Positions 1,497-32,190 of a stretch of 35,997 nt of DNA are shown here, piece after piece. Source of the DNA: Octopus sinensis (lineage: Eukaryota). Under the pieces are notes generated by a model, which saw only the letters and a list, made by a program, of their open reading frames with translations, was not told the origin of the DNA and did not search any database. Where the stretch lies: contig NW_021826275.1 in assembly GCF_006345805.1 (NCBI RefSeq), positions 1 through 35,997 of the forward strand, read 5' to 3'. The position numbers and the translations under genes are program-made. Position 1 is the first letter of the stretch. Each line of letters opens with the position of its first letter.

Positions 1497-2147
1497 AATT
1501 CTTTGTCTCGCTCTGCACTCACAGGTCATTCTTCGACAACCCATCCCTTCTCCTCTCTGATTCCTTCTTTCTCTCTCTTCTCTCTCTTTGTTGCGTTGTC
1601 CCGCTCCTCTCTCTCTCTCTTCCTTTGCTTCTCTTTCTTTTCTTTTCCCTCTTCTCTGTCACGTGACTGTTGGCCGAAATCTGCCTTTCAGCTCCTGACC
1701 CTCGTCGTGTTAACATCGTTGTTTTTCGTCCGCCGCTATAAAGGCTTCTTCCAATGCGCCAGAGAGAGAAAAATTTTGTTTGCTTGTTATCAGTCGTAAG
1801 ACACTTGTTGTTTTCACCACCGTTATTCTTCTGTATTTTTCATGTTTTCTGTATTCCATTATTGTTTTTGTTTTTTTTATCTGTCCCTTTTGCTGTCCTG
1901 GTGTTCGTATGCATTCGATCCTTCTTCCAGGAAATCTACGCTTCCAGCTTAGTTTTTCTAATGCTCGTTGCTTAGTTTTTCTTGGAGGGCTGGCTGTGAT
2001 CTAGTAATCTCAAGATTAATCAGCCGAAATTACTACGATGATCCGGTTCTTGACTGAAGACTGAGGGTTCGAGTGTCCTGTCCGTGTTTATTGTGTCGTC
2101 TTCTAAGAGTTATACGTTCTTGTCCATGTTGTATTTTTCTACATACC

Positions 2148-2186
<39 letters not shown>

Positions 2187-2188
<2 letters not shown>

Positions 2189-2366
2189 CGGGAAAGTTTA
2201 CGAAAATAAACAAAAGACGAAGGTAGGTGGAGTACAAACAAACAAATGTATTAGTATAGCGCTCAGAAATAGAAATAGAACAAGTCTTTTACGTTTCGAG
2301 CCTACGCTCTTCGACAGAAAGATACACAGAAAAAAACAAGGAGAGAAACAAGGAGAGAAAAAATGC
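2187..2366 (-). mobile_element. Penelope-like element terminal (pseudo-LTR-type) fragment
   Basis: Inferred from the embedded minimal hammerhead motif typical of PLEs. No RT or GIY-YIG coding sequence is seen. Confidence 0.45.
2285..2322 (-). ncRNA. Minimal type I hammerhead ribozyme motif (core variant CUGUCGA)
   Basis: Minus strand UCUUU-CUGUCGA-A-GAGC(GUAG)GCUC-GAAA-CGU-A-AAAGA: 5-bp stem I, 4-bp stem II, palindromic ACGU stem III, GUA cleavage triplet. A6 of CUGANGA is U. Confidence 0.65.
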
Positions 2367-2628
2367 GTGTCATCTCTTGTGAAAGGTAGGAGAGTCCAGT
2401 TTGCTGGACATTGTTGTAGAGCTGAAAAAGAAGTAATTTCTACTCTTCTCCTCTGGAAGCCATCTACTCGCAACACCAGAGGGCGCACACTCTCCTACCC
2501 TGATGTAATCTCCAGGGATACAGGCATCCAGCAACAGGACCTCCGTAATGCTATGATGGACCGTGAAGTCTGGCGCAACATGGTAAATTCCATTGTCTCG
2601 ACCACGGTCGAACAATGATGATGATGAT
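2367..2628 (+). mobile_element. RTE-X-type LINE, 5'-truncated 3' end
   Basis: Encodes SLVKGRRVQFAGHCCRAEKEVISTLLLWKPS...LSYPDVISRDTG...AMMDREVWR. Stop at 2616-2618 runs straight into a (TGA)n tail. Confidence 0.85.
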
Positions 2629-7470: not shown

Positions 7471-7679
7471 CATTGGCTTCAAATTTTGGCAGCAAGTTGG
7501 AGGAAGGGATTAAGTCGATTACATCGATCCCCAGGGCTTGACTGCTGCTTATTTTATCGACACCGAGGGGATAAAAGGCAAAGTCGACCTAGACGAAATT
7601 TGAACTCAGAACGTTAAGATGGTGGAAATGCCGCTGAGCACTTCACCCGGGCTGCTAACCATTCTGCCAGCGCCCTGCC
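7471..7679 (-). mobile_element. SINE family B (tRNA head, Sauria/Meta-like central domain), monomer
   Basis: TAAGTCGATTACATCGA...AAAGGCAAAGTCGACC...AATTTGAACTCAGAAC; B-box GAGTTCAAAT on the minus strand. Confidence 0.8.
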
Positions 7680-10254: not shown

Positions 10255-11060
10255 CATTGGGAACCCCGCCTCCACCACCGTCACCACCGCGGCCACCACC
10301 CTCACCACCATCCTTAATACTTCAGCAATTGCAACGGCCACCATCATCACCGCCATCATTACTACTAACGTTGCCAGCATCCTCAATACCGGCTCCCAGC
10401 ATCACCACCACATCCACCATCATCCTCACCATAGCGACTGACACTAACAGCCCCACATCACACCAACCACCAACACCACCACCACCACTACCACCACCAA
10501 CACCACTAACACCACTACCACCACCACCAACAACAACAACACCACTACCAACACCACCACCACCACCACTACCACCAACAACACCACCACTACCACCACC
10601 ACCACCACCACTACCACCACCACCAACACCACTACCACCACCACCAACACCACTACCACCACCACCACCAACACCAACACCACCACCACTACCACAACTA
10701 CCACCACCACCACCACCACCACTACCAACACCACCACCAACAACACCACCACCACCAACAACACCACCACCACCACCACCATCAACACCACCAACACCAC
10801 CACCACCACCACCACCACCATCAACACCACCATCACCACCACCACCATCGTCATCATCAATGCTATTCTCGTCGTCGTCGTCGTCGTCCTCATCATCGAC
10901 ATTATCATTGTTATTATTTTCATCATCAAAACCGTCGACATTCTTATCATCAACGCCAGCCACTTCCTCCTCCCCTTCTTCTTCTTCTTCTTCCTTTTCC
11001 TCCCATATCATAATTCATCATCATCATCATCATCATCATCATCGTCGTCGTTGTCGTCAT
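10255..11060. repeat. Degenerate (ACC)n/(CAT)n/(TCG)n/(TTC)n trinucleotide field
   Basis: Directly visible; source of the Pro/Thr, Gly/Val and poly-Val pseudo-ORFs. Confidence 0.9.
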
Positions 11061-11168
11061 CGTAGTTGTCCTCATCAGAATGTTACTCTGTTATTACAGG
11101 GATCAGAAGGAAAACAATTATTTCTAGTTTCTAAGGCACCGAAGAAAAAGATTGCTCTATCATCTCAT

Positions 11169-11260
<92 letters not shown>

Positions 11261-11324
11261 CATCTCGACTCTCTCTTCCTCATTCTTTCTTTTGTTCTTT
11301 TTTCTCCCTACACACATACCCGCA

Positions 11325-12058
11325 CTGACATTCCATCGGTACGACGACGAGTTTTGCAGTTGATCCGATGAATAGAACAGTCTGTTCATAAAATTAATGT
11401 GCAACTATAGGCTCAGGAGTGGCTGTGTGGTAAGCAGCTTGCTTATCAACCACATGGTTCTAGGCAAGTGTCTTCTACTATAGCCTCGGGCCTACTAAGT
11501 CTTGTGATATGGTAGATGGAAACTGAAAGAAGCCTGTCATGCATATGTATATATATGTGTATGTGTGTGTGTATATGTTTGTGTGTCTATGTTTGTCCCC
11601 CCAACATCGCTTGACAACCGATGGTGGTATGTTTACGTCCCCGTCAATTAGCGGTTCGGCAAAAGAGACCGATAGAATAAGTACTAGGCTTGTCCTGGGA
11701 TCGATTTGCTCGACTAAAGGCGGTGCTCCAGCATGGCCGCAGTCAACTGACTGAAACAAGTAAAAGAGAGTAAAAGAGAGTAACTAGTTGTGTACTCCAC
11801 AGTCGCGTGTACCCTTAGCATAGTTCTCAGATAGATTCAGCGTGACACAGAATGTGATAAGACTGGCCCTTTTAATTACAGGTACAATATATTTTTGCCA
11901 GGTGAGTACTCCACAGACACGTGTGCCCTTAATGTAGTTCTCAAGGAGATTTAGTATGACACAGAATGTGACAAGGCTGGCCCTTTGGTTACAACTCATT
12001 TTCGCTAGTTGAATGAACTGGAGAAACGCGAAATAAAGTGTCTTGCTCAGGACACAAC
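11325..12058 (-). mobile_element. SINE family D (head missing), with a 114-bp internal tandem duplication, interrupted by SINE A
   Basis: GTACTCCACAG...GACACAGAATGTGA..AG.CTGGCCC at 11792 and 11906; AAATAAAGTGTCTTGCTCAGGACACAA resembles the 28025-28240 copy. Confidence 0.65.
11408..11781 (+). mobile_element. SINE family A, near full length, flanked by AACTA direct repeats
   Basis: Head, central block and tail are present; AACTA at 11403-11407 and 11782-11786. Confidence 0.9.
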
Positions 12059-12341
12059 ATCGAGCATGCTTTGACAAACTTACGGCGATGAGGCAATGGG
12101 TCGCACTCAATATTCCGACTGGCACGAACCCTTCAAAAGTGGAACAACACCGTTGGGAGACGATGTGTGATCTGGAAGACCTACTACGAGCGTCAACCCC
12201 CGGAAATGGGGTATTGTACATGGAGAATTCGTTCCTTGGGGCTGGACTGTCAATCGAGAGTTCTTCTGCGGTATTTTGAAACGTTTGAGAGAGGACATTC
12301 AGCGAAAGCAACCGGATCTGTGGAGCACAAATTGTTCACGA

Positions 12342-14706
12342 TGGTTTCTTCGCGATGGATTCTTCACAATGGATTCTTCACGATGGAATCTTCACGATTG
12401 AATCTTCACGATGGAATCTTCACGATAGTTTCTTCGCGATGGATTCTTCACAATGGATTCTTCACATGGCTTCTTCACGATGGAATCTTCACGATGGTTT
12501 CTTCGCGATGGATTCTTCACAATGGATTCTTCACGATGGAATCTTCACGATGGAATCTTCACGATGGAATCTTCACGATGGAATCTTCACGATTGAATCT
12601 TCACGATGGAATCTTCACGATGGTTTCTTCGCGATGGATTCTTCACAATGGATTCTTCACATGGCTTCTTCACGATGGAATCTTCACGATGGTTTCTTCG
12701 CGATGGATTCTTCACAATGGATTCTTCACGATGGAATCTTCACGATGGAATCTTCACGATGGTTTCTTCGCGATGGATTCTTCACAATGGATTCTTCACA
12801 TGGCTTCTTCACGATGGAATCTTCACGATGGTTTCTTCACGATGTATTCTTCACAATGGATTCTTCACGATGGAATCTTCACGATGGAATCTTCACGATG
12901 GAATCTTCACGATGGTTTCTTCGCGATGGATTCTTCACAATGGATTCTTCACATGGCTTCTTCACGATGGAATCTTCACGATGGTTTCCTCGCGATGGAT
13001 TCTTCACAATGGATTCTTCACGATGGAATCTTCACGATGGAATCTTCACGATGGAATCTTCACGATGGTTTCTTCGCGATGGATTCTTCACAATGGATTC
13101 TTCACATGGCTTCTTCACGATGGAATCTTCGCGATGGTTTCTTCGGGATGGATTCTTCACAATGGATTCTTCACGATGGAATCTTCACGATGGTTTCTTC
13201 GCGATGGATTCTTCACAATGGATTCTTCACATGGCTTCTTCACGATGGAATCTTCACGATGGTTTCTTCGCGATGGATTCTTCACAATGGATTCTTCACA
13301 TGGCTTCTTCACGATGGAATCTTCACGATGATTTCTTCGCGATGGATTCTTCACAATGGATTCTTCACGATGGAATCTTCACGATGGAATCTTCACGATG
13401 GTTTCTTCGCGATGGATTCTTCACAATGGATTCTTCACGATGGAATCTTCACGATGGAATCTTCACGATGGAATCTTCACGATGGTTTCTTCGCGATGGA
13501 TTCTTCAGAATGGATTCTTCACGATGGAATCTTCACGATGGAATCTTCACGATGGTTTCTTCGCGATGGATTCTTCACAATGGATTCTTCACGATGGAAT
13601 CTTCACGATGGAATCTTCACGATGGTTTCTTCGCGATGGATTCTTCACAATGGATTCTTCACATGGCTTCTTCACGATGGAATCTTCACGATGGTTTCTT
13701 CGCGATGGATTCTTCACAATGGATTCTTCACGATGGAATCTTCACGATGGAATCTTCACGATGGTTTCTTCGCGATGGATTCTTCACAATGGATTCTTCA
13801 CATGGCTTCTTCACGATGGTTTCTTCGCGATGGATTCTTCACAATGGATTCTTCACGATGGAATCTTCACGATGGAATCTTCACGATGGAATCTTCACGA
13901 TGGTTTCTTCGCGATGGATTCTTCACAATGGATTCTTCACGATGGAATCTTCACGATGGAATCTTCACGATGGTTTCTTCGCGATGGATTCTTCACAATG
14001 GATTCTTCACATGGCTTCTTCACGATGGTTTCTTCGCGATGGATTCTTCACAATGGATTCTTCACATGGCTTCTTCACGATGGAATCTTCACGATGGTTT
14101 CTTCGCGATGGATTCTTCACAATGGATTCTTCACATGGCTTCTTCACGATGGAATCTTCACGATTGTTTCTTCGCGATGGATTCTTCACAATGGATTCTT
14201 CACGATGGCTTCTTCACGATGGAATCTTCACGATGGTTTCTTCGCGATGGATTCTTCACAATGGATTCTTCACATGGCTTCTTCACGATGGAATCTTCAC
14301 GATGGTTTCTTCGCGATGGATTCTTCACAATGGATTCTTCACATGGCTTCTTCACGATGGAATCTTCACGATTGTTTCTTCGCGATGGATTCTTCACATG
14401 GCTTCTTCACGATGGAATCTTCACGATGGATTCTTCGCGTTGGATTCTTCGCGATGGATTCTTCACGATGGATTCTTCGCGATGGATCCTTCACGATGGA
14501 TCCTTCACGATGTATTCTTCACGATGAATTCTTCGCGATGGATTCTTCGCGATGGATTCTTCACGATGGATTCTTCGCGATGGATTCTTCACGATGGATT
14601 CTTCACGATGGATTCTTCGCGATGGATTCTTCACGATGGATTCTTCGCGATGGATTCTTCACGATGGATACTTCACGATTGATTCTTCGCGGTGGATTCT
14701 TCACGA
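12342..14706 (+). repeat. Minisatellite, 170 units (155 x 14 bp + 15 x 13 bp), consensus TGGATTCTTCACGA
   Basis: Directly visible. The 13-bp units were counted from the single-frame translation, and 155x14+15x13 = 2365 matches the span. Confidence 0.97.
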
Positions 14707-15034
14707 TGACAATGCACCCTGTCAGCGATCTCTCCTTAGTCGTCAGTTTCTCACCAAATACAACATGGCATCGCTTCAGGACCCACCGTATACGCCAGAT
14801 TTAGCACCTGCGAACTTCCATCTCTTCCGCAAGATGAAAATGCAGCTCAAAGGTCGACGTTTTAATACCGTTGTCGAGATCCAGAGCAAATTGCAAACGG
14901 TCCTCAACTTGACTTCCACGCCGGATTCCAAAGGTGGCAGGAATGCCGGGACCCGTGTAATGCTGCGCAAGGTGATTATTTCGAAGGAGATGATGTAAAA
15001 ACTTAAGTAAATAAGTTATCTTGTATAAACATAT

Positions 15035-15062
15035 AGTCCATGAACTTTTTTATAACTCCTCG
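15035..15062 (-). repeat. Mariner right terminal inverted repeat; TA target at 15063-15064
   Basis: Minus strand reads TA|CGAGGAGTTATAAAAAAGTTCATGGAC, resembling irritans/Hsmar2-type TIRs as recalled; lies about 35-60 bp after the transposase end. Confidence 0.85.
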
Positions 15063-15271
15063 TATGTATATATTTGTGTTTGTGTGTGTGAGTACATACA
15101 TATACCTGTATACGTATATACTTGTATGTATATATGTATATACCCATGTGTATATATATATGTATATACATATGTGTATGTATACATATATATATGTACA
15201 TATACGTTCATGTTTATATATGTGTGTGTGTCTGTGTTTGTGTGTATGTATGCATGTATACACACATATAC

Positions 15272-16373: not shown

Positions 16374-16768
16374 AAGGGGCCTAAACATAGAGGGCACAAA
16401 CAAGGACAAACGGATTAAGTCGATTACATTGACCCCGGTGCGTAACTGGTACTCATTTAATCGACCCCGAGAGGATGAAAGGCAAATACGACCTCGGTGG
16501 AATTTGAACTCAGAACGTAACGGCATACGAAATACCTATTTCATTACTACCCACAAGGGGCTAAACACAGGAGGGGACAAAGAAGGATAGACAAACGGAT
16601 TAAGTCGATTATATCGACCCAAGTGCGTAACTGGTACTTATTTAATCGACTGTGAAAGGATGAAAGGCAAAGTTGACCTTGGCGGAATTTGAACTCAGAA
16701 CCTAACGGCAGACGAAATACCGCTACGCATTTCGCCCAGCGTGCTAACGTTTCTGCCAGCTCGCCGCC
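16374..16768 (-). mobile_element. SINE family B dimer
   Basis: Two tandem bodies and one complete head; junction GAAATACCTATTTC at 16529-16542. Confidence 0.88.
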
Positions 16769-16799
16769 ATATATGTATGTAACTATGTATGTATATATG

Positions 16800-19927: not shown

Positions 19928-20339
19928 TATTTCTTTATTGCCCACAAGGGGTTAAACATAGAGGGGATAAACAAGGACAGACAAAGGGATTAAGTCGATT
20001 ACATCGACCCCAGTGCGTAACTGGTACTTGATTTATCGACCCCGAAAACATGAAAGGCAAAGTCGACCTCAGTGGAATTTGAACTCAGAACATAGTGACA
20101 GGTGAAATACCTATTTCTTTACTACCTACAAGGGGCTAAACACAGAGAGGACAAACAAGGACAGACAAAGGGATTAAGTCGATTACATCGAACCCAGTGC
20201 GTAAATGGTATTTAATTTATCGACCCCGAAAGGATGAAAGGCAAAGTCGGCCTCGGCGGAATTTGAACTCAGAATGTAGCGGCAGACGAAATACCGCCAA
20301 GTATTTCACCCCGCGTGCTAATGATTCTGCCAGCTCGCC
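19928..20339 (-). mobile_element. SINE family B dimer
   Basis: Junction GAAATACCTATTTC at 20104-20117. Confidence 0.88.
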
Positions 20340-23571: not shown

Positions 23572-23606
23572 GTCGATGATGATGATGATGGTGGTGGTGG
23601 TGGTGG

Positions 23607-23680
<74 letters not shown>

Positions 23681-23691
23681 GTGGGTGGTGG

Positions 23692-23723
<32 letters not shown>

Positions 23724-23730
23724 GTGGTGG

Positions 23731-23768
<38 letters not shown>

Positions 23769-23772
23769 GTGG

Positions 23773-23804
<32 letters not shown>

Positions 23805-24032
23805 GTGGTGGTAATGATGATGATGATGATGATAATGATGATGATGATGATGATGATGATGGTGGTGGTGATGGTGATGGTGGTAGTGGTGCTGATGGTG
23901 GGGTGGTGGTGTTGGCGATGATGTCGATGATGATGATGACGATTGTGCTGATGATGATGACGATTGTGCTGACGAGGATGACGACGACGACAACAATGAT
24001 GATAATGAAGAGGATGATGATGATGATGACGT

Positions 24033-24089
<57 letters not shown>

Positions 24090-24090
24090 C

Positions 24091-24136
<46 letters not shown>

Positions 24137-24168
24137 TTGATGATGATGATGATATCGACGATGACGAT
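23572..24168. repeat. (GAT/GGT)n trinucleotide field
   Basis: Directly visible. Confidence 0.9.
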
Positions 24169-24697
24169 GGTGTCTAGCTCCAGGTTAGTCTTGATCCAAC
24201 AAACCTATAATATTTATCAAAGACATTCCATTCGTGACAATCACAACTTTTTAGGGGTTTCCGAAATGATATTATCTAGCATTTCATTCATTTTCCTTTT
24301 ATATGGCCAGATATAATTTTATGGGAGATTAGCTTTTCTTTCTACCTCGTCAATCCTCCACGTAGAGGCTTCTTTCATCGCTTACATGTACACATATATA
24401 TTATATTATATAATATATTTATATTATTTATATAATATAAATATAAATATATTTATATTTACATTATATATATATATAAACATGCATATATGTATATGAA
24501 CATTCATATATATATATAAATAAACATACATATATACATATACAAACATATATATATATATATATACATATAGACATGCATATATGTACATATAAACATA
24601 CACACACATATATATATATATAGACATACATATATATAAGTATTTATAAAATGGATATATACATATATGAATATATATGTGGGGTGGGGTGTGTATA

Positions 24698-25505: not shown

Positions 25506-25903
25506 GTTTCTTTATTGCCCACAAGGGGTTAAACATAGAGGGGACAAACAAGTACAGACAAAGGGATTAAGTCGATTACATCGACCCCATTGCGTAACTG
25601 GTACTTAATTTATCGACACCGAAAACATGAAAGGCAAAGTGAACCTCGGCGGAATTTGAACTCAGAACGTAACGGCAGATGAAATACCTATTTCTTTACT
25701 ACCCACAAGGGGCTAAACACAGAGGGGACAAACAAGGACAGACATAGGTATTAAGTCGATTACATCGACCCCAGTGCGTAACTGGTACTTAATTTATCGA
25801 CCCCGAAAGGATGAAAGGCATAGTCGACCTCGGCGGAATTTGAACTCAGACGAAATACCACTAAGCATTTCGCCCGGCGTACTAACGTTTCCGCCAGCTC
25901 GCC
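25506..25903 (-). mobile_element. SINE family B dimer
   Basis: Junction GAAATACCTATTTC at 25681-25694. Confidence 0.88.
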
Positions 25904-31036: not shown

Positions 31037-31203
31037 GGCGCGGGCGTGGCTGTGTGGTAAGAAGCTTGCTTCCCGGCCACGTGGTCCTGGGTTCAGTCCC
31101 ACTGCATGGCACCTTGAGCGAGTGTCTTCTACTACAGCCTCAGGCCGACCAAGGTCTTGTGAGTGGATTTCTTAGACGGAAACTGAAAGAAGCCTGTCGT
31201 ATA
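31037..31203 (+). mobile_element. SINE family A, 5' half
   Basis: GGCGCGGGCGTGGCTGTGTGGTAAGAAGC...GACGGAAACTGAAAGAAGCC. Confidence 0.85.
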
Positions 31204-31263
31204 TACATACATACATACATACATACATACATTCATACATACATACATACATATACACATACA

Positions 31264-31297
<34 letters not shown>

Positions 31298-31746
31298 CAT
31301 ATACACACACATATACATACATACATACACACATACCTGAATACATACATACATACACACCACAACATACATACATATAATCCCAGACATATACATATTC
31401 ACACATACACACATACATACATACTACATTACATACATACATACATACACATACATACATACATACACATACATATAACTACATACATACATACATACAT
31501 ACATTCATACATACATACATACATACATACATACATAACATACATACATCATATACACATACATACATACATACATACATACATACATACATACATAATA
31601 ATAATACAATACATACATACCATACATATACACATACATACATACCTACATACATACATAATACATACATTCATACATACATACATACCTACATATACAT
31701 ACATACATTACATACATACAACCATACATACATATACACCTACATG

Positions 31747-31777
<31 letters not shown>

Positions 31778-32190
31778 ACATATACACACACATATACATA
31801 CATACATACACCATACCTGAATACATACATACATACACCATACCTACAAATATACATACATACTACATACATACAACATACACACATACCAAACATACAT
31901 ACATCATCCAACATACCATTACATACATACATACACACATATATACATACAAACACACACACGTTACATACAACATACATACATACATACATACATACAT
32001 ACATAAATACCTACATACATATATACATAAAAACACACACACGTATACATACATACATTACATACATACATACATATACATACATACATAAATACATACA
32101 TACATATATACATACAAACACACACACGTATACATACATACATACATACATACATACGTACATTCATACATACATACGTACCTATATACA
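31201..32190. repeat. ~1-kb degenerate (TACA)n microsatellite
   Basis: Directly visible; starts where the internal microsatellite of SINE A normally sits. Confidence 0.9.

What the first reader, a model, noticed from the sequence alone, without database searches (positions are those of the whole stretch)
12342..14706. A 2.4-kb minisatellite born from the active-site codons of a mariner transposase
Seen: the unit TGGATTCTTCACGA is the sequence encoding W-I-L-H-(D). The last unit runs directly into TGACAATGCACC (D-N-A-P), and the array sits between ...KQPDLWSTN and DNAP..., where mariner has W-x-L-H-H-D-N-A-P. Established: that D is the second catalytic Asp of the DD34D triad, and transposons are known sources of satellites. 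Inference: a TG...TG microhomology slip duplicated 14 bp, which amplified to 170 units. Seed and both flanks are preserved, so the birth of a satellite is recorded in place, and from a catalytic motif rather than a TIR or subterminal region.
Basis: partly seen in the sequence, partly recalled or inferred. Interest (0 to 1): 0.85.

Follow-up and report, generated by a model that had tools for sequence, protein, structure and literature searches.

The report
Minisatellite grown inside a dead mariner
A 2.4-kb run of 170 copies of a 14-base unit has grown in place out of a few codons of a broken mariner transposase gene, probably in an octopus genome; it is a clean but ordinary example of how dead transposons seed tandem repeats.

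Summary
Window 12342-14706 is 170 head-to-tail units of TGGATTCTTCACGA (15 of them 13 bp), and the unit occurs nowhere else in the window. The flanks are one dead mariner copy (12052-15062). It is 5'-truncated and internally deleted, has a stop and a frameshift, and carries N at the third catalytic position.

With the array collapsed to one unit, the copy aligns colinearly through the junction with seven related mariner copies, one of them in Octopus sinensis. Origin from the W-I-L-H-(D) codons is therefore well supported.

Corrections:
- The catalytic Asp codon (GAC 14708-14710, Mos1 D249) lies just outside the unit.
- The left junction is not intact: 5 bp of the first unit and one codon are missing.
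- The "TG slip" rests on 2 bp and cannot be tested here.

New here: the array body is 29 higher-order blocks (69-bp CBFEA, 56-126-bp CBDA(n)), 0.6% diverged. A 280-bp right-end zone keeps seed-type units and is 2.9% diverged.

Tandem repeats derived from transposons, including from transposase coding sequence, are already documented. I could not search the source genome for other arrays. Low-to-moderate interest.

The parts
12052..12334 (+). Left fragment of a dead mariner copy. It holds remnants of the N-terminal DNA-binding region, then, after an internal deletion, codons equivalent to Mos1 ~201-243, ending ...CTG TGG AGC ACA AAT TG.
   Evidence: blastn to relative L001: window 12052-12199 = L001 1709-1850, and 12213-12326 = L001 2108-2221. 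Translation ...GIVHGEFVP...RKQPDLWSTN. No 5' TIR anywhere in the window.
12168..12170 (+). In-frame TGA stop in the transposase remnant (DDV*SGRP).
   Evidence: Translation; coordinates.
12199..12213 (+). Junction of an internal deletion. About 258 bp present in relative L001 are absent here. On the Mos1 numbering the lost stretch is roughly residues 76-200, which includes the first catalytic Asp.
   Evidence: blastn coordinates: L001 element 391-649 has no counterpart. Mos1 alignment starts at residue 201.
12333..12341 (+). Truncated first unit: TG + TTCACGA, lacking GATTC.
   Evidence: Sequence; comparison with the single-copy AAT TGG ATT CT(C/T) CAC GA of relatives.
12342..14426 (+). Array body: 150 units organised as 29 higher-order blocks. 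There are 12 x C-B-F-E-A (69 bp) and 13 x C-B-D-A(1-6) (56-126 bp; commonly 70 or 84 bp), plus variants. Private changes are only 0.58%.
   Evidence: Segmentation and block parsing. 10 exact copies of the 69-bp block and 7 of the 70-bp block. Autocorrelation peaks at 14, 28, 42, 56, 139, 153, 70 and 125 bp.
14427..14706 (+). Right-end zone: 20 units, all seed-type (TGGATTCTTCACGA), its one-step derivative TGGATTCTTCGCGA, or one- to two-base variants of these. There is no higher-order structure. Private changes are 2.86%. The last unit (14693-14706) is identical to the seed.
   Evidence: Fisher exact test against the body, p = 0.0012.
14708..14710 (+). GAC, the codon of the second catalytic Asp (Mos1 D249 equivalent). 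It is single-copy and lies just outside the repeat unit.
   Evidence: Alignment to full-length Mos1, 3hos_A; sequence.
14707..15062 (+). Right fragment of the mariner copy: DNAPCQRS...PDLAPANFHLF...KGRRF..., a frameshift near 14905-14915, the transposase stop (TAA 15004-15006 in the shifted frame) and the 3' terminal inverted-repeat region.
   Evidence: blastn to L001 2231-2615 at 74%. Translation frames. 3' end aligned with the 39-nt TIR of L001.
14813..14815 (+). AAC (Asn) at the third catalytic position, 34 residues after the catalytic Asp. The copy is DD34N rather than DD34D.
   Evidence: Alignment to Mos1 APSDYHLF; count on the sequence.
15063..15064 (.). TA next to the 3' end, consistent with a mariner TA target-site duplication. 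The 5' partner is lost.
   Evidence: Sequence; comparison with the TA-flanked L001 element.

Best explanation
This is a single-locus minisatellite that arose in place inside an already non-functional or decaying mariner (DD34D-type) transposon copy.

Proposed sequence of events:
1. The 14 bases TGGATTCTTCACGA were duplicated once. They comprise the codons Trp-Ile-Leu-His plus two bases of the next Asp codon, immediately upstream of the second catalytic Asp codon. This first step is inferred. Replication slippage or an out-of-register repair event is likely, possibly helped by a 2-bp TG repeat.
2. Once two copies existed, slippage and unequal sister-chromatid exchange or gene conversion added units. 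This gave a seed-type array with A-to-G variants, which survives at the right end.
3. Five variant units became fixed as a higher-order block (C-B-D/F-A/E-A, 69-70 bp).
4. Unequal exchange in the block register, together with continued single-unit slippage (runs of 1-6 'A' units), then built the young 2.1-kb body up to the left boundary. There, 5 bp of the first unit and one codon were lost.

The array has no evident function. It is neutral DNA whose origin can still be read because the host transposon has relatives.
For: Shown directly:
- The array, its 170 units and its confinement to this site.
- The flanks are one mariner copy. PDB SETMAR and Mos1 score E = 1e-14 to 1e-10. 8,969 relatives exist in the representative library.
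- Collapsing the array to one unit gives single uninterrupted alignments across the junction with L001, L002, L005, L006 and L007, and with L008 (Octopus sinensis chromosome) and L009.
- Every relative has one copy: TGGATTCTCCACGA, TGGATCCTTCACGG, TGGATTCTCCATGA, TGGCTTTTTCACCA, TGGATTCTTCAGGA, TTGATTCTTCATGA.
- All close protein relatives read LW-x-x-(K/N)-N-WILHDDNAP with no extra residues.
- The last unit is identical to the seed. The 20 right-end units are seed or one-step variants and are more diverged (2.86%) than the body (0.58%), p = 0.0012.
- All major variants are one substitution or deletion from the seed, except C, which is two steps away via G.
- The body has higher-order structure with 10 and 7 exact block copies.
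- No comparable array was found in JGI metagenome contigs, which do contain related mariner copies.
- No protein resembling the translated array exists among 5.8 billion predicted proteins.

Inferred: the order of events and the molecular mechanisms of the first duplication and of the later growth.
Against: - The source genome could not be searched. A second array elsewhere, or a subfamily that already carried a short array, is not excluded.
- The relatives are only 72-79% identical at the DNA level, so the immediate ancestor of this copy is not sampled.
- The left junction is not a clean seed boundary (8 bp missing), so the simplest 'n perfect copies between intact flanks' picture does not hold exactly.
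- The 2-bp microhomology is no stronger than chance (about 1/16).
- The single strand shows no slippage-prone hairpin. The DNA fold z-score is +1.46, weaker than shuffles.
- The array length rests on one assembly.
Confidence: 0.8

Rival explanations
1. The 14-bp repeat is a multi-locus satellite family of this genome, itself ultimately derived from mariner. This locus received its array from another locus by recombination or gene conversion through the homologous 14 bases, rather than growing it locally.
For: In-phase junctions would look the same under this scenario. The young, homogeneous higher-order body (0.58%) next to an older right-end zone could be read as an imported block. The left junction is damaged.
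Against: No unit (up to 2 mismatches) occurs elsewhere in the 36-kb window. No such array appears in metagenome contigs holding related cephalopod-like DNA. No translated equivalent exists in the protein collection. The body's variants are all one or two steps from the local seed. Local origin needs fewer events.
Confidence: 0.09
2. A short array was already present in a non-autonomous mariner subfamily and was spread by transposition. This copy inherited it and merely expanded it.
For: Tc1/mariner MITEs carrying internal satellite arrays of variable copy number are known in Xenopus (miDNA4, described in PMC12628747). The closest subfamily members of this copy are not sampled.
Against: All seven relatives with DNA, and all close protein relatives, have a single unit. 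This copy lacks its 5' end and could not itself have been mobile in its present form.
Confidence: 0.06
3. The array is real, but its length or internal order is an assembly artefact: expansion, collapse or mis-ordering of a repeat that reads cannot anchor.
For: 2.4 kb of 14-mers cannot be resolved by short reads. Only one assembly is available.
Against: The array has anchored, distinct ends. It has a non-periodic succession of block types with scattered singleton changes, which is typical of a read-through by long reads rather than of a collapsed or duplicated consensus.
Confidence: 0.04
4. The array is coding. The + strand is open in all three frames, giving ORFs of 786, 775 and 482 aa.
For: Long ORFs.
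Against: Openness follows from a unit that happens to have no stop in any phase, which has roughly a 50% chance for a 14-mer. The 13-bp units shift the frame repeatedly. No homologue was found among 5.8 billion proteins. No exact product is on record. The ORFs are embedded in a pseudogenised transposon.
Confidence: 0.01

Closest known systems
TE-derived minisatellites/satellites of the human genome (Ahmed & Liang 2012, PMC3389668)
   Same: A tandem repeat whose unit is a segment of a transposable element. It is initiated at or after insertion of an individual copy and expanded by local duplication of units. Incomplete terminal units are discussed there as a signature of slippage at non-contiguous repeats.
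   Different: The human cases are dominated by Alu and LTR elements, and most have few copies. Here the host is a mariner DNA transposon in a mollusc-like genome, with 170 copies and higher-order structure.
CficCl-61-40 satellite of Chenopodium, seeded by the tnp2 transposase domain of the CACTA element Jozin (Belyayev et al. 2020, PMC7320549)
   Same: A short fragment of a DNA-transposon transposase coding domain serves as the start monomer of a tandem array that abuts the transposase remnant.
   Different: That satellite is the major, multi-locus satellite family of the genome, with a unit of about 40 bp. Here there is one locus, a 14-bp unit and a different transposon superfamily.
miDNA4, a Tc1/mariner MITE of Xenopus with an internal satellite (Scalvenzi & Pollet, as summarised in PMC12628747)
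   Same: Same transposon superfamily; an internal array of variable copy number; microhomology-mediated expansion is proposed.
   Different: miDNA4 is a mobile non-autonomous element thought to have captured a pre-existing repeat, and the repeat is not transposase coding sequence. Here the unit is transposase codons and the host copy is immobile.
Bari1 heterochromatic cluster of Drosophila melanogaster (summarised in PMC9659126)
   Same: A Tc1/mariner element turned into a tandem array.
   Different: In Bari1 the whole element is the repeat unit (about 80 copies). Here only 14 internal bases are repeated.
ORF-derived repeats of retrotransposons (L1 ORF2: PROsat, Pvc20 microsatellites; CR1 ORF2: HinfI; gag: E3900), Table 1 of PMC9659126
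   Same: The repeat unit comes from TE coding sequence rather than from terminal repeats or UTRs.
   Different: Those are Class I elements, and mostly much longer units or microsatellites.
Higher-order repeat organisation of satellites (e.g. primate alpha satellite; from general knowledge)
   Same: Diverged monomers are fixed in a multi-monomer block that is then amplified nearly identically. Older monomeric units persist at an array edge.
   Different: The scale differs: 14-bp monomers, 69-84-bp blocks, 2.4 kb in total. There is no link to centromeres.

Membership tests
Minisatellite | Head-to-tail tandem array with a unit of about 10-100 bp and array length of about 0.5-30 kb | tested here: met
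   Period 14, 170 units, 2365 bp.
Minisatellite | Copy-number polymorphism between individuals (VNTR behaviour) | not testable with these tools
   Only one sequence of the locus is available.
TE-derived tandem repeat formed in situ | The unit is homologous to a segment that is single-copy in other copies of the element | tested here: met
   Seven relatives each have one copy, with 10-13 of 14 bases identical to the seed.
TE-derived tandem repeat formed in situ | Both flanks of the array are contiguous in the element when the array is removed | tested here: met
   Single uninterrupted blastn alignments across the collapsed junction. 8 bp are missing at the left junction.
TE-derived tandem repeat formed in situ | No older or independent arrays of the same unit elsewhere in the same genome | not testable with these tools
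   The source genome is not available. The unit is absent from the rest of the window, and no comparable array was found in metagenome contigs or the protein collection.
Satellite DNA family (classical sense) | Many long arrays at several loci, making up a measurable fraction of the genome | not testable with these tools
   One 2.4-kb locus was seen and nothing elsewhere in 36 kb. I do not file it as a satellite family.
mariner (Tc1/mariner superfamily, DD34D) transposon: host element | Transposase homologous to mariner transposases | tested here: met
   SETMAR/Hsmar1 E = 2e-14, Mos1 E = 5e-12. 1,704 relatives at E <= 1e-10. Pfam Transposase_1 and DDE_3 only below threshold.
mariner (Tc1/mariner superfamily, DD34D) transposon: host element | Catalytic triad with 34 residues between the second and third acidic residues | tested here: inconclusive
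   The spacing is 34 residues (GAC 14708 to AAC 14813). The third residue is Asn in this copy, and the first Asp region is deleted. This fits a decayed DD34D element.
mariner (Tc1/mariner superfamily, DD34D) transposon: host element | Terminal inverted repeats flanked by a TA duplication | tested here: inconclusive
   The 3' end aligns with the 39-nt TIR of relative L001 and is followed by TA. No 5' TIR is present in the window.

The most novel reading that the evidence does not exclude
This locus could be the founder, caught in place, of a lineage-specific 14-bp satellite family, or it could be a hypervariable VNTR in a cephalopod. In either case its seed, an early monomeric phase and a later higher-order phase are all preserved in one array. 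That would let the tempo of satellite birth be dated against the decay of the host mariner and compared across sister octopus species.
Probability: 0.1. Interest if true: 0.45.

Novelty: new member of a known kind. Interest (0 to 1): 0.25.

Why it matters
The locus is a tidy teaching example. The seed, a relic of the early monomeric array, a young higher-order body and the host transposon can all be read in 3 kb. It adds a mariner transposase-coding origin to the list of TE regions known to seed tandem repeats.

There are also practical points:
- The array splits one mariner fragment into two apparent fragments 2.4 kb apart.
- It creates stop-free ORFs of up to 786 aa that gene callers could mistake for genes.
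- It may be a useful VNTR marker if polymorphic.

It does not change any general view. That the seed lies next to a catalytic residue has no functional meaning in a dead copy.

Tried and rejected
1. Scan of JGI metagenome contigs for two and a bit adjacent units (TGGNNTCTTCNCNATGGNNTCTTCNCNATGG). There were only two hits, both GC-rich contigs with 3-4 copies of TTCACGATGGTTTC in unrelated sequence. I judged these a coincidence.
2. Search of 5.8 billion proteins with the 775-aa translation of the array, to find arrays called as ORFs in other assemblies. Nothing scored at E <= 0.001.
3. Exact-product look-ups of two window ORFs, to locate the source assembly. Neither is on record.
4. Search for a 5' TIR or a second mariner copy in the window. 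None found.
5. Hairpin-driven slippage. The single-strand DNA fold of 140 nt of the array is weaker than shuffles, z = +1.46, so I rejected this as a driver.
6. Reading the left-flank 'C-S-R' as ancestral residues. Rejected, because no relative has extra residues there. It is the tail of a truncated unit.
7. Rfam scan of the window. No matches.
8. Pfam scan of three other ORFs in the window. No matches.
9. Literature search for a minisatellite derived from mariner coding sequence. I found no direct precedent, only precedents of the same kind in other TE groups.
10. Paper search for the sample accessions of the metagenome and Logan relatives. Nothing found.

Full report
**1. The observation**

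Tandem Repeats Finder reports a single array at 12331-14708: period 14, 170.9 copies, 86% matches. A wrap-around alignment to TGGATTCTTCACGA splits 12342-14706 into exactly 170 units (2365 bp; 15 units are 13 bp). A 9-bp truncated unit precedes them at 12333-12341. With up to two mismatches the unit matches 163 times, always inside the array, against 0.25 expected by shuffling.

As an exact string it is only the fourth commonest variant:

| Label | Unit | Count |
|---|---|---|
| A | TGGAATCTTCACGA | 45 |
| B | TGGATTCTTCACAA | 26 |
| C | TGGTTTCTTCGCGA | 22 |
| D (seed) | TGGATTCTTCACGA | 21 |
| E | TGGCTTCTTCACGA | 16 |
| F (13 bp) | TGGATTCTTCACA | 15 |
| G | TGGATTCTTCGCGA | 6 |

**2. The flanks**

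The left flank translates to ...GIVHGEFVPWGWTVNREFFCGILKRLREDIQRKQPDLWSTN. The last unit plus the right flank translates to WILHDDNAPCQRSLL...PDLAPANFHLFRKMKMQLKGRRF.... Joined, they match the catalytic domains of SETMAR/Hsmar1 (E = 2e-14) and Mos1 (E = 5e-12) among solved structures. The Pfam Transposase_1 and DDE_3 matches are only sub-threshold. An exhaustive search finds 8,969 relatives, the best at 65% identity.

The alignment to full-length Mos1 places W-I-L-H-D on V244-H248, and the following D on D249, the second catalytic Asp. The unit therefore covers the codons immediately upstream of the catalytic codon. The catalytic codon itself (GAC, 14708-14710) is single-copy in the right flank. 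Thirty-four residues further on, at the third catalytic position, this copy has Asn (AAC, 14813-14815).

The copy is clearly dead:
- It has no 5' TIR and starts about 250 bp into the element.
- It lacks about 258 bp at 12199/12213, which on the Mos1 numbering removes the first catalytic Asp.
- It has an in-frame TGA at 12168-12170.
- It has a frameshift near 14905-14915.

The 3' end (to 15062, followed by TA) aligns with the 39-nt TIR of a relative. It is the only mariner copy in the window.

**3. Where the array came from**

I obtained DNA for seven related copies:
- three from JGI metagenomes (L001, L002, L007);
- three from Logan assemblies (L005, L006, L009);
- one on an Octopus sinensis chromosome (L008, GCA_006345805.1; the accession is identified in bioRxiv 10.1101/2023.05.16.540928).

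Against the uncollapsed window, L001 aligns up to 12326 and resumes at 14693, only 9 bases further along in L001. With the array collapsed to one unit, all seven align in a single uninterrupted stretch across the junction at 72-76% identity. Each has exactly one copy: TGGATTCTCCACGA (L001, L002), TGGATTCTCCATGA (L007), TGGATCCTTCACGG (L005), TGGCTTTTTCACCA (L006), TGGATTCTTCAGGA (L008), TTGATTCTTCATGA (L009).

Close protein relatives all read LW-x-x-(K/N)-N-WILHDDNAP. H-D-D, rather than the H-H-D of many mariners, is thus this lineage's own state. The 'C-S-R' seen after STN in the window is not ancestral; it is the tail of a truncated unit.

The left junction is imperfect. Relative to every relative, the window lacks one codon and the GATTC of the first unit (8 bp in total).

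**4. Internal anatomy**

The array has two zones.

- The right 280 bp (14427-14706; 20 units) contain only the seed unit D, its one-step derivative G, and one- to two-base variants of these, with no higher-order pattern. The last unit is identical to the seed.
- The remaining 2085 bp (150 units) are 29 higher-order blocks. There are 12 C-B-F-E-A (69 bp), 13 C-B-D-A(n) with n = 1-6 (56-126 bp; commonly 70 or 84 bp), and four variants. Ten copies of the 69-bp block and seven of the 70-bp block are exact. Autocorrelation peaks at 125, 139 and 153 bp correspond to pairs of blocks.

Every major variant is one change from the seed, except C, which is two steps away via G. Departures from the nearest major variant are 0.58% in the body and 2.86% in the right zone (Fisher p = 0.0012).

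My inference is that the right zone is a relic of an early monomeric array, and the body is a younger amplification in block register that reached the left boundary. If the source is an octopus, and the calibration quoted for octopus TEs applies (JC 0.09 corresponds to about 25 My; PMC13282606), these values correspond very roughly to 1-2 My and 8 My since the last turnover. Homogenisation makes such figures lower bounds at best.

**5. Mechanism**

What is shown is the start state (one unit, in relatives) and the end state. The first duplication is inferred. The array ends with TG beyond an integral number of units, so a 2-bp microhomology is compatible with a slip. However, 2 bp is expected by chance about once in 16. 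The GAT codon that creates it is also present, unduplicated, in L001.

The published models for minisatellite initiation, as summarised in PMC3389668, are slippage at non-contiguous short repeats leaving an incomplete terminal unit, and 5-10-bp flanking direct repeats. They fit only loosely. There is an incomplete terminal unit at the left, but no long flanking repeat. The single strand has no unusual hairpin potential (z = +1.46).

Growth by single-unit slippage is suggested by the variable runs of A units. Growth by unequal exchange or conversion is suggested by the exact 69-70-bp blocks.

**6. What could not be tested**

The partial substitutes were all negative:
- the rest of the window;
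- JGI metagenome contigs, which do contain related mariner copies (two unrelated GC-rich hits only);
- the translated array against 5.8 billion proteins;
- exact-product look-ups.

**7. Source organism**

The closest protein relative lies in Octopus sinensis. That 16-kb locus shares many SINE-like interspersed repeats with the window at 73-83% identity. The window is also saturated with microsatellites. I infer an octopod-like cephalopod source, but this is not proven.

**8. Comparison with what is known**

TE-derived tandem repeats are well documented:
- 7,276 minisatellites/satellites (23%) in human, initiated at or after insertion and grown by local duplication (PMC3389668).
- Reviews list LTR, TIR, UTR and also ORF origins (L1 ORF2, CR1 ORF2, gag), and state that central parts of DNA transposons can seed satellites (PMC9659126, PMC12628747).
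- The nearest precedent in kind is the Chenopodium CficCl-61-40 satellite, whose start monomer is a roughly 40-bp piece of the CACTA tnp2 transposase domain (PMC7320549).
- For Tc1/mariner, the listed cases are a MITE with an internal satellite (miDNA4) and whole-element tandems (Bari1).

I found no report of a repeat seeded by mariner transposase codons. So this is a new instance of a known process.

**9. Verdict**

The core of the interpretation, origin from the W-I-L-H-(D) codons of this mariner copy, is well supported. The details are over-read: 'active-site codons', 'both flanks preserved', the TG slip and the novelty claim. Proximity to a catalytic residue has no functional meaning in a dead copy. 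Interest is low to moderate.

Noticed in passing
window 12167-14804 (+): The + strand of the array has no stop codon in any of the three phases. This gives mechanical ORFs of 786, 775 and 482 aa with a 14-residue periodicity. No homologue exists in the protein collection. This is an annotation hazard, not a gene.
   Followed up: yes
L008 (Octopus sinensis GCA_006345805.1, CM016860.1) versus the window: The closest protein relative of the mariner remnant (65%) lies on an O. sinensis chromosome. That 16-kb locus shares many SINE-like interspersed repeats with the window at 73-83% identity, which suggests the window comes from an octopod-like cephalopod.
   Followed up: partly
window 14813-14815; relatives P0001, P0005, P0013, P0046: The third catalytic position is Asn instead of Asp in this copy and in several independent relatives (APANF / APVNF). 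This echoes the DDN of SETMAR. It is probably recurrent decay, but it was not analysed.
   Followed up: no
window 19928-20295 and 25507-25850; further copies near 7490-7671 and 16415-16783: A 184-bp SINE-like unit occurs as tandem dimers at two loci 5 kb apart, and as single copies elsewhere. The same family is present in the O. sinensis locus L008.
   Followed up: partly
window 11786-11872 and 11900-11986: Two 87-nt direct repeats (82% identical, 114 bp apart) lie immediately upstream of the point where the mariner copy is truncated. They may belong to the element whose insertion removed the mariner 5' end.
   Followed up: no
L003 964-994 and L004 5083-5113 (JGI metagenome contigs): Two GC-rich metagenome contigs, probably bacterial, share an identical stretch with 3-4 tandem copies of TTCACGATGGTTTC. 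This is almost the same 14-mer as the array's unit, in unrelated flanks. I judged it a coincidence.
   Followed up: partly
whole window, e.g. 10461-10847, 23575-24169, 31203-32190: Microsatellite density is extreme (111 Tandem Repeats Finder rows in 36 kb). Examples are (CAC)129, (GAT)198 and (ATAC)250. They produce long low-complexity pseudo-ORFs such as a 368-aa proline-rich one at 10257-11363.
   Followed up: no
window 2073-2618 (+): A 181-aa ORF has a C-terminal part (…FAGHCCRAEKEVISTLLLWKP…DREVWRNMV…) that, from memory, resembles the C-terminal tail of LINE/RTE-type retrotransposon ORFs. Pfam gives no match.
   Followed up: partly
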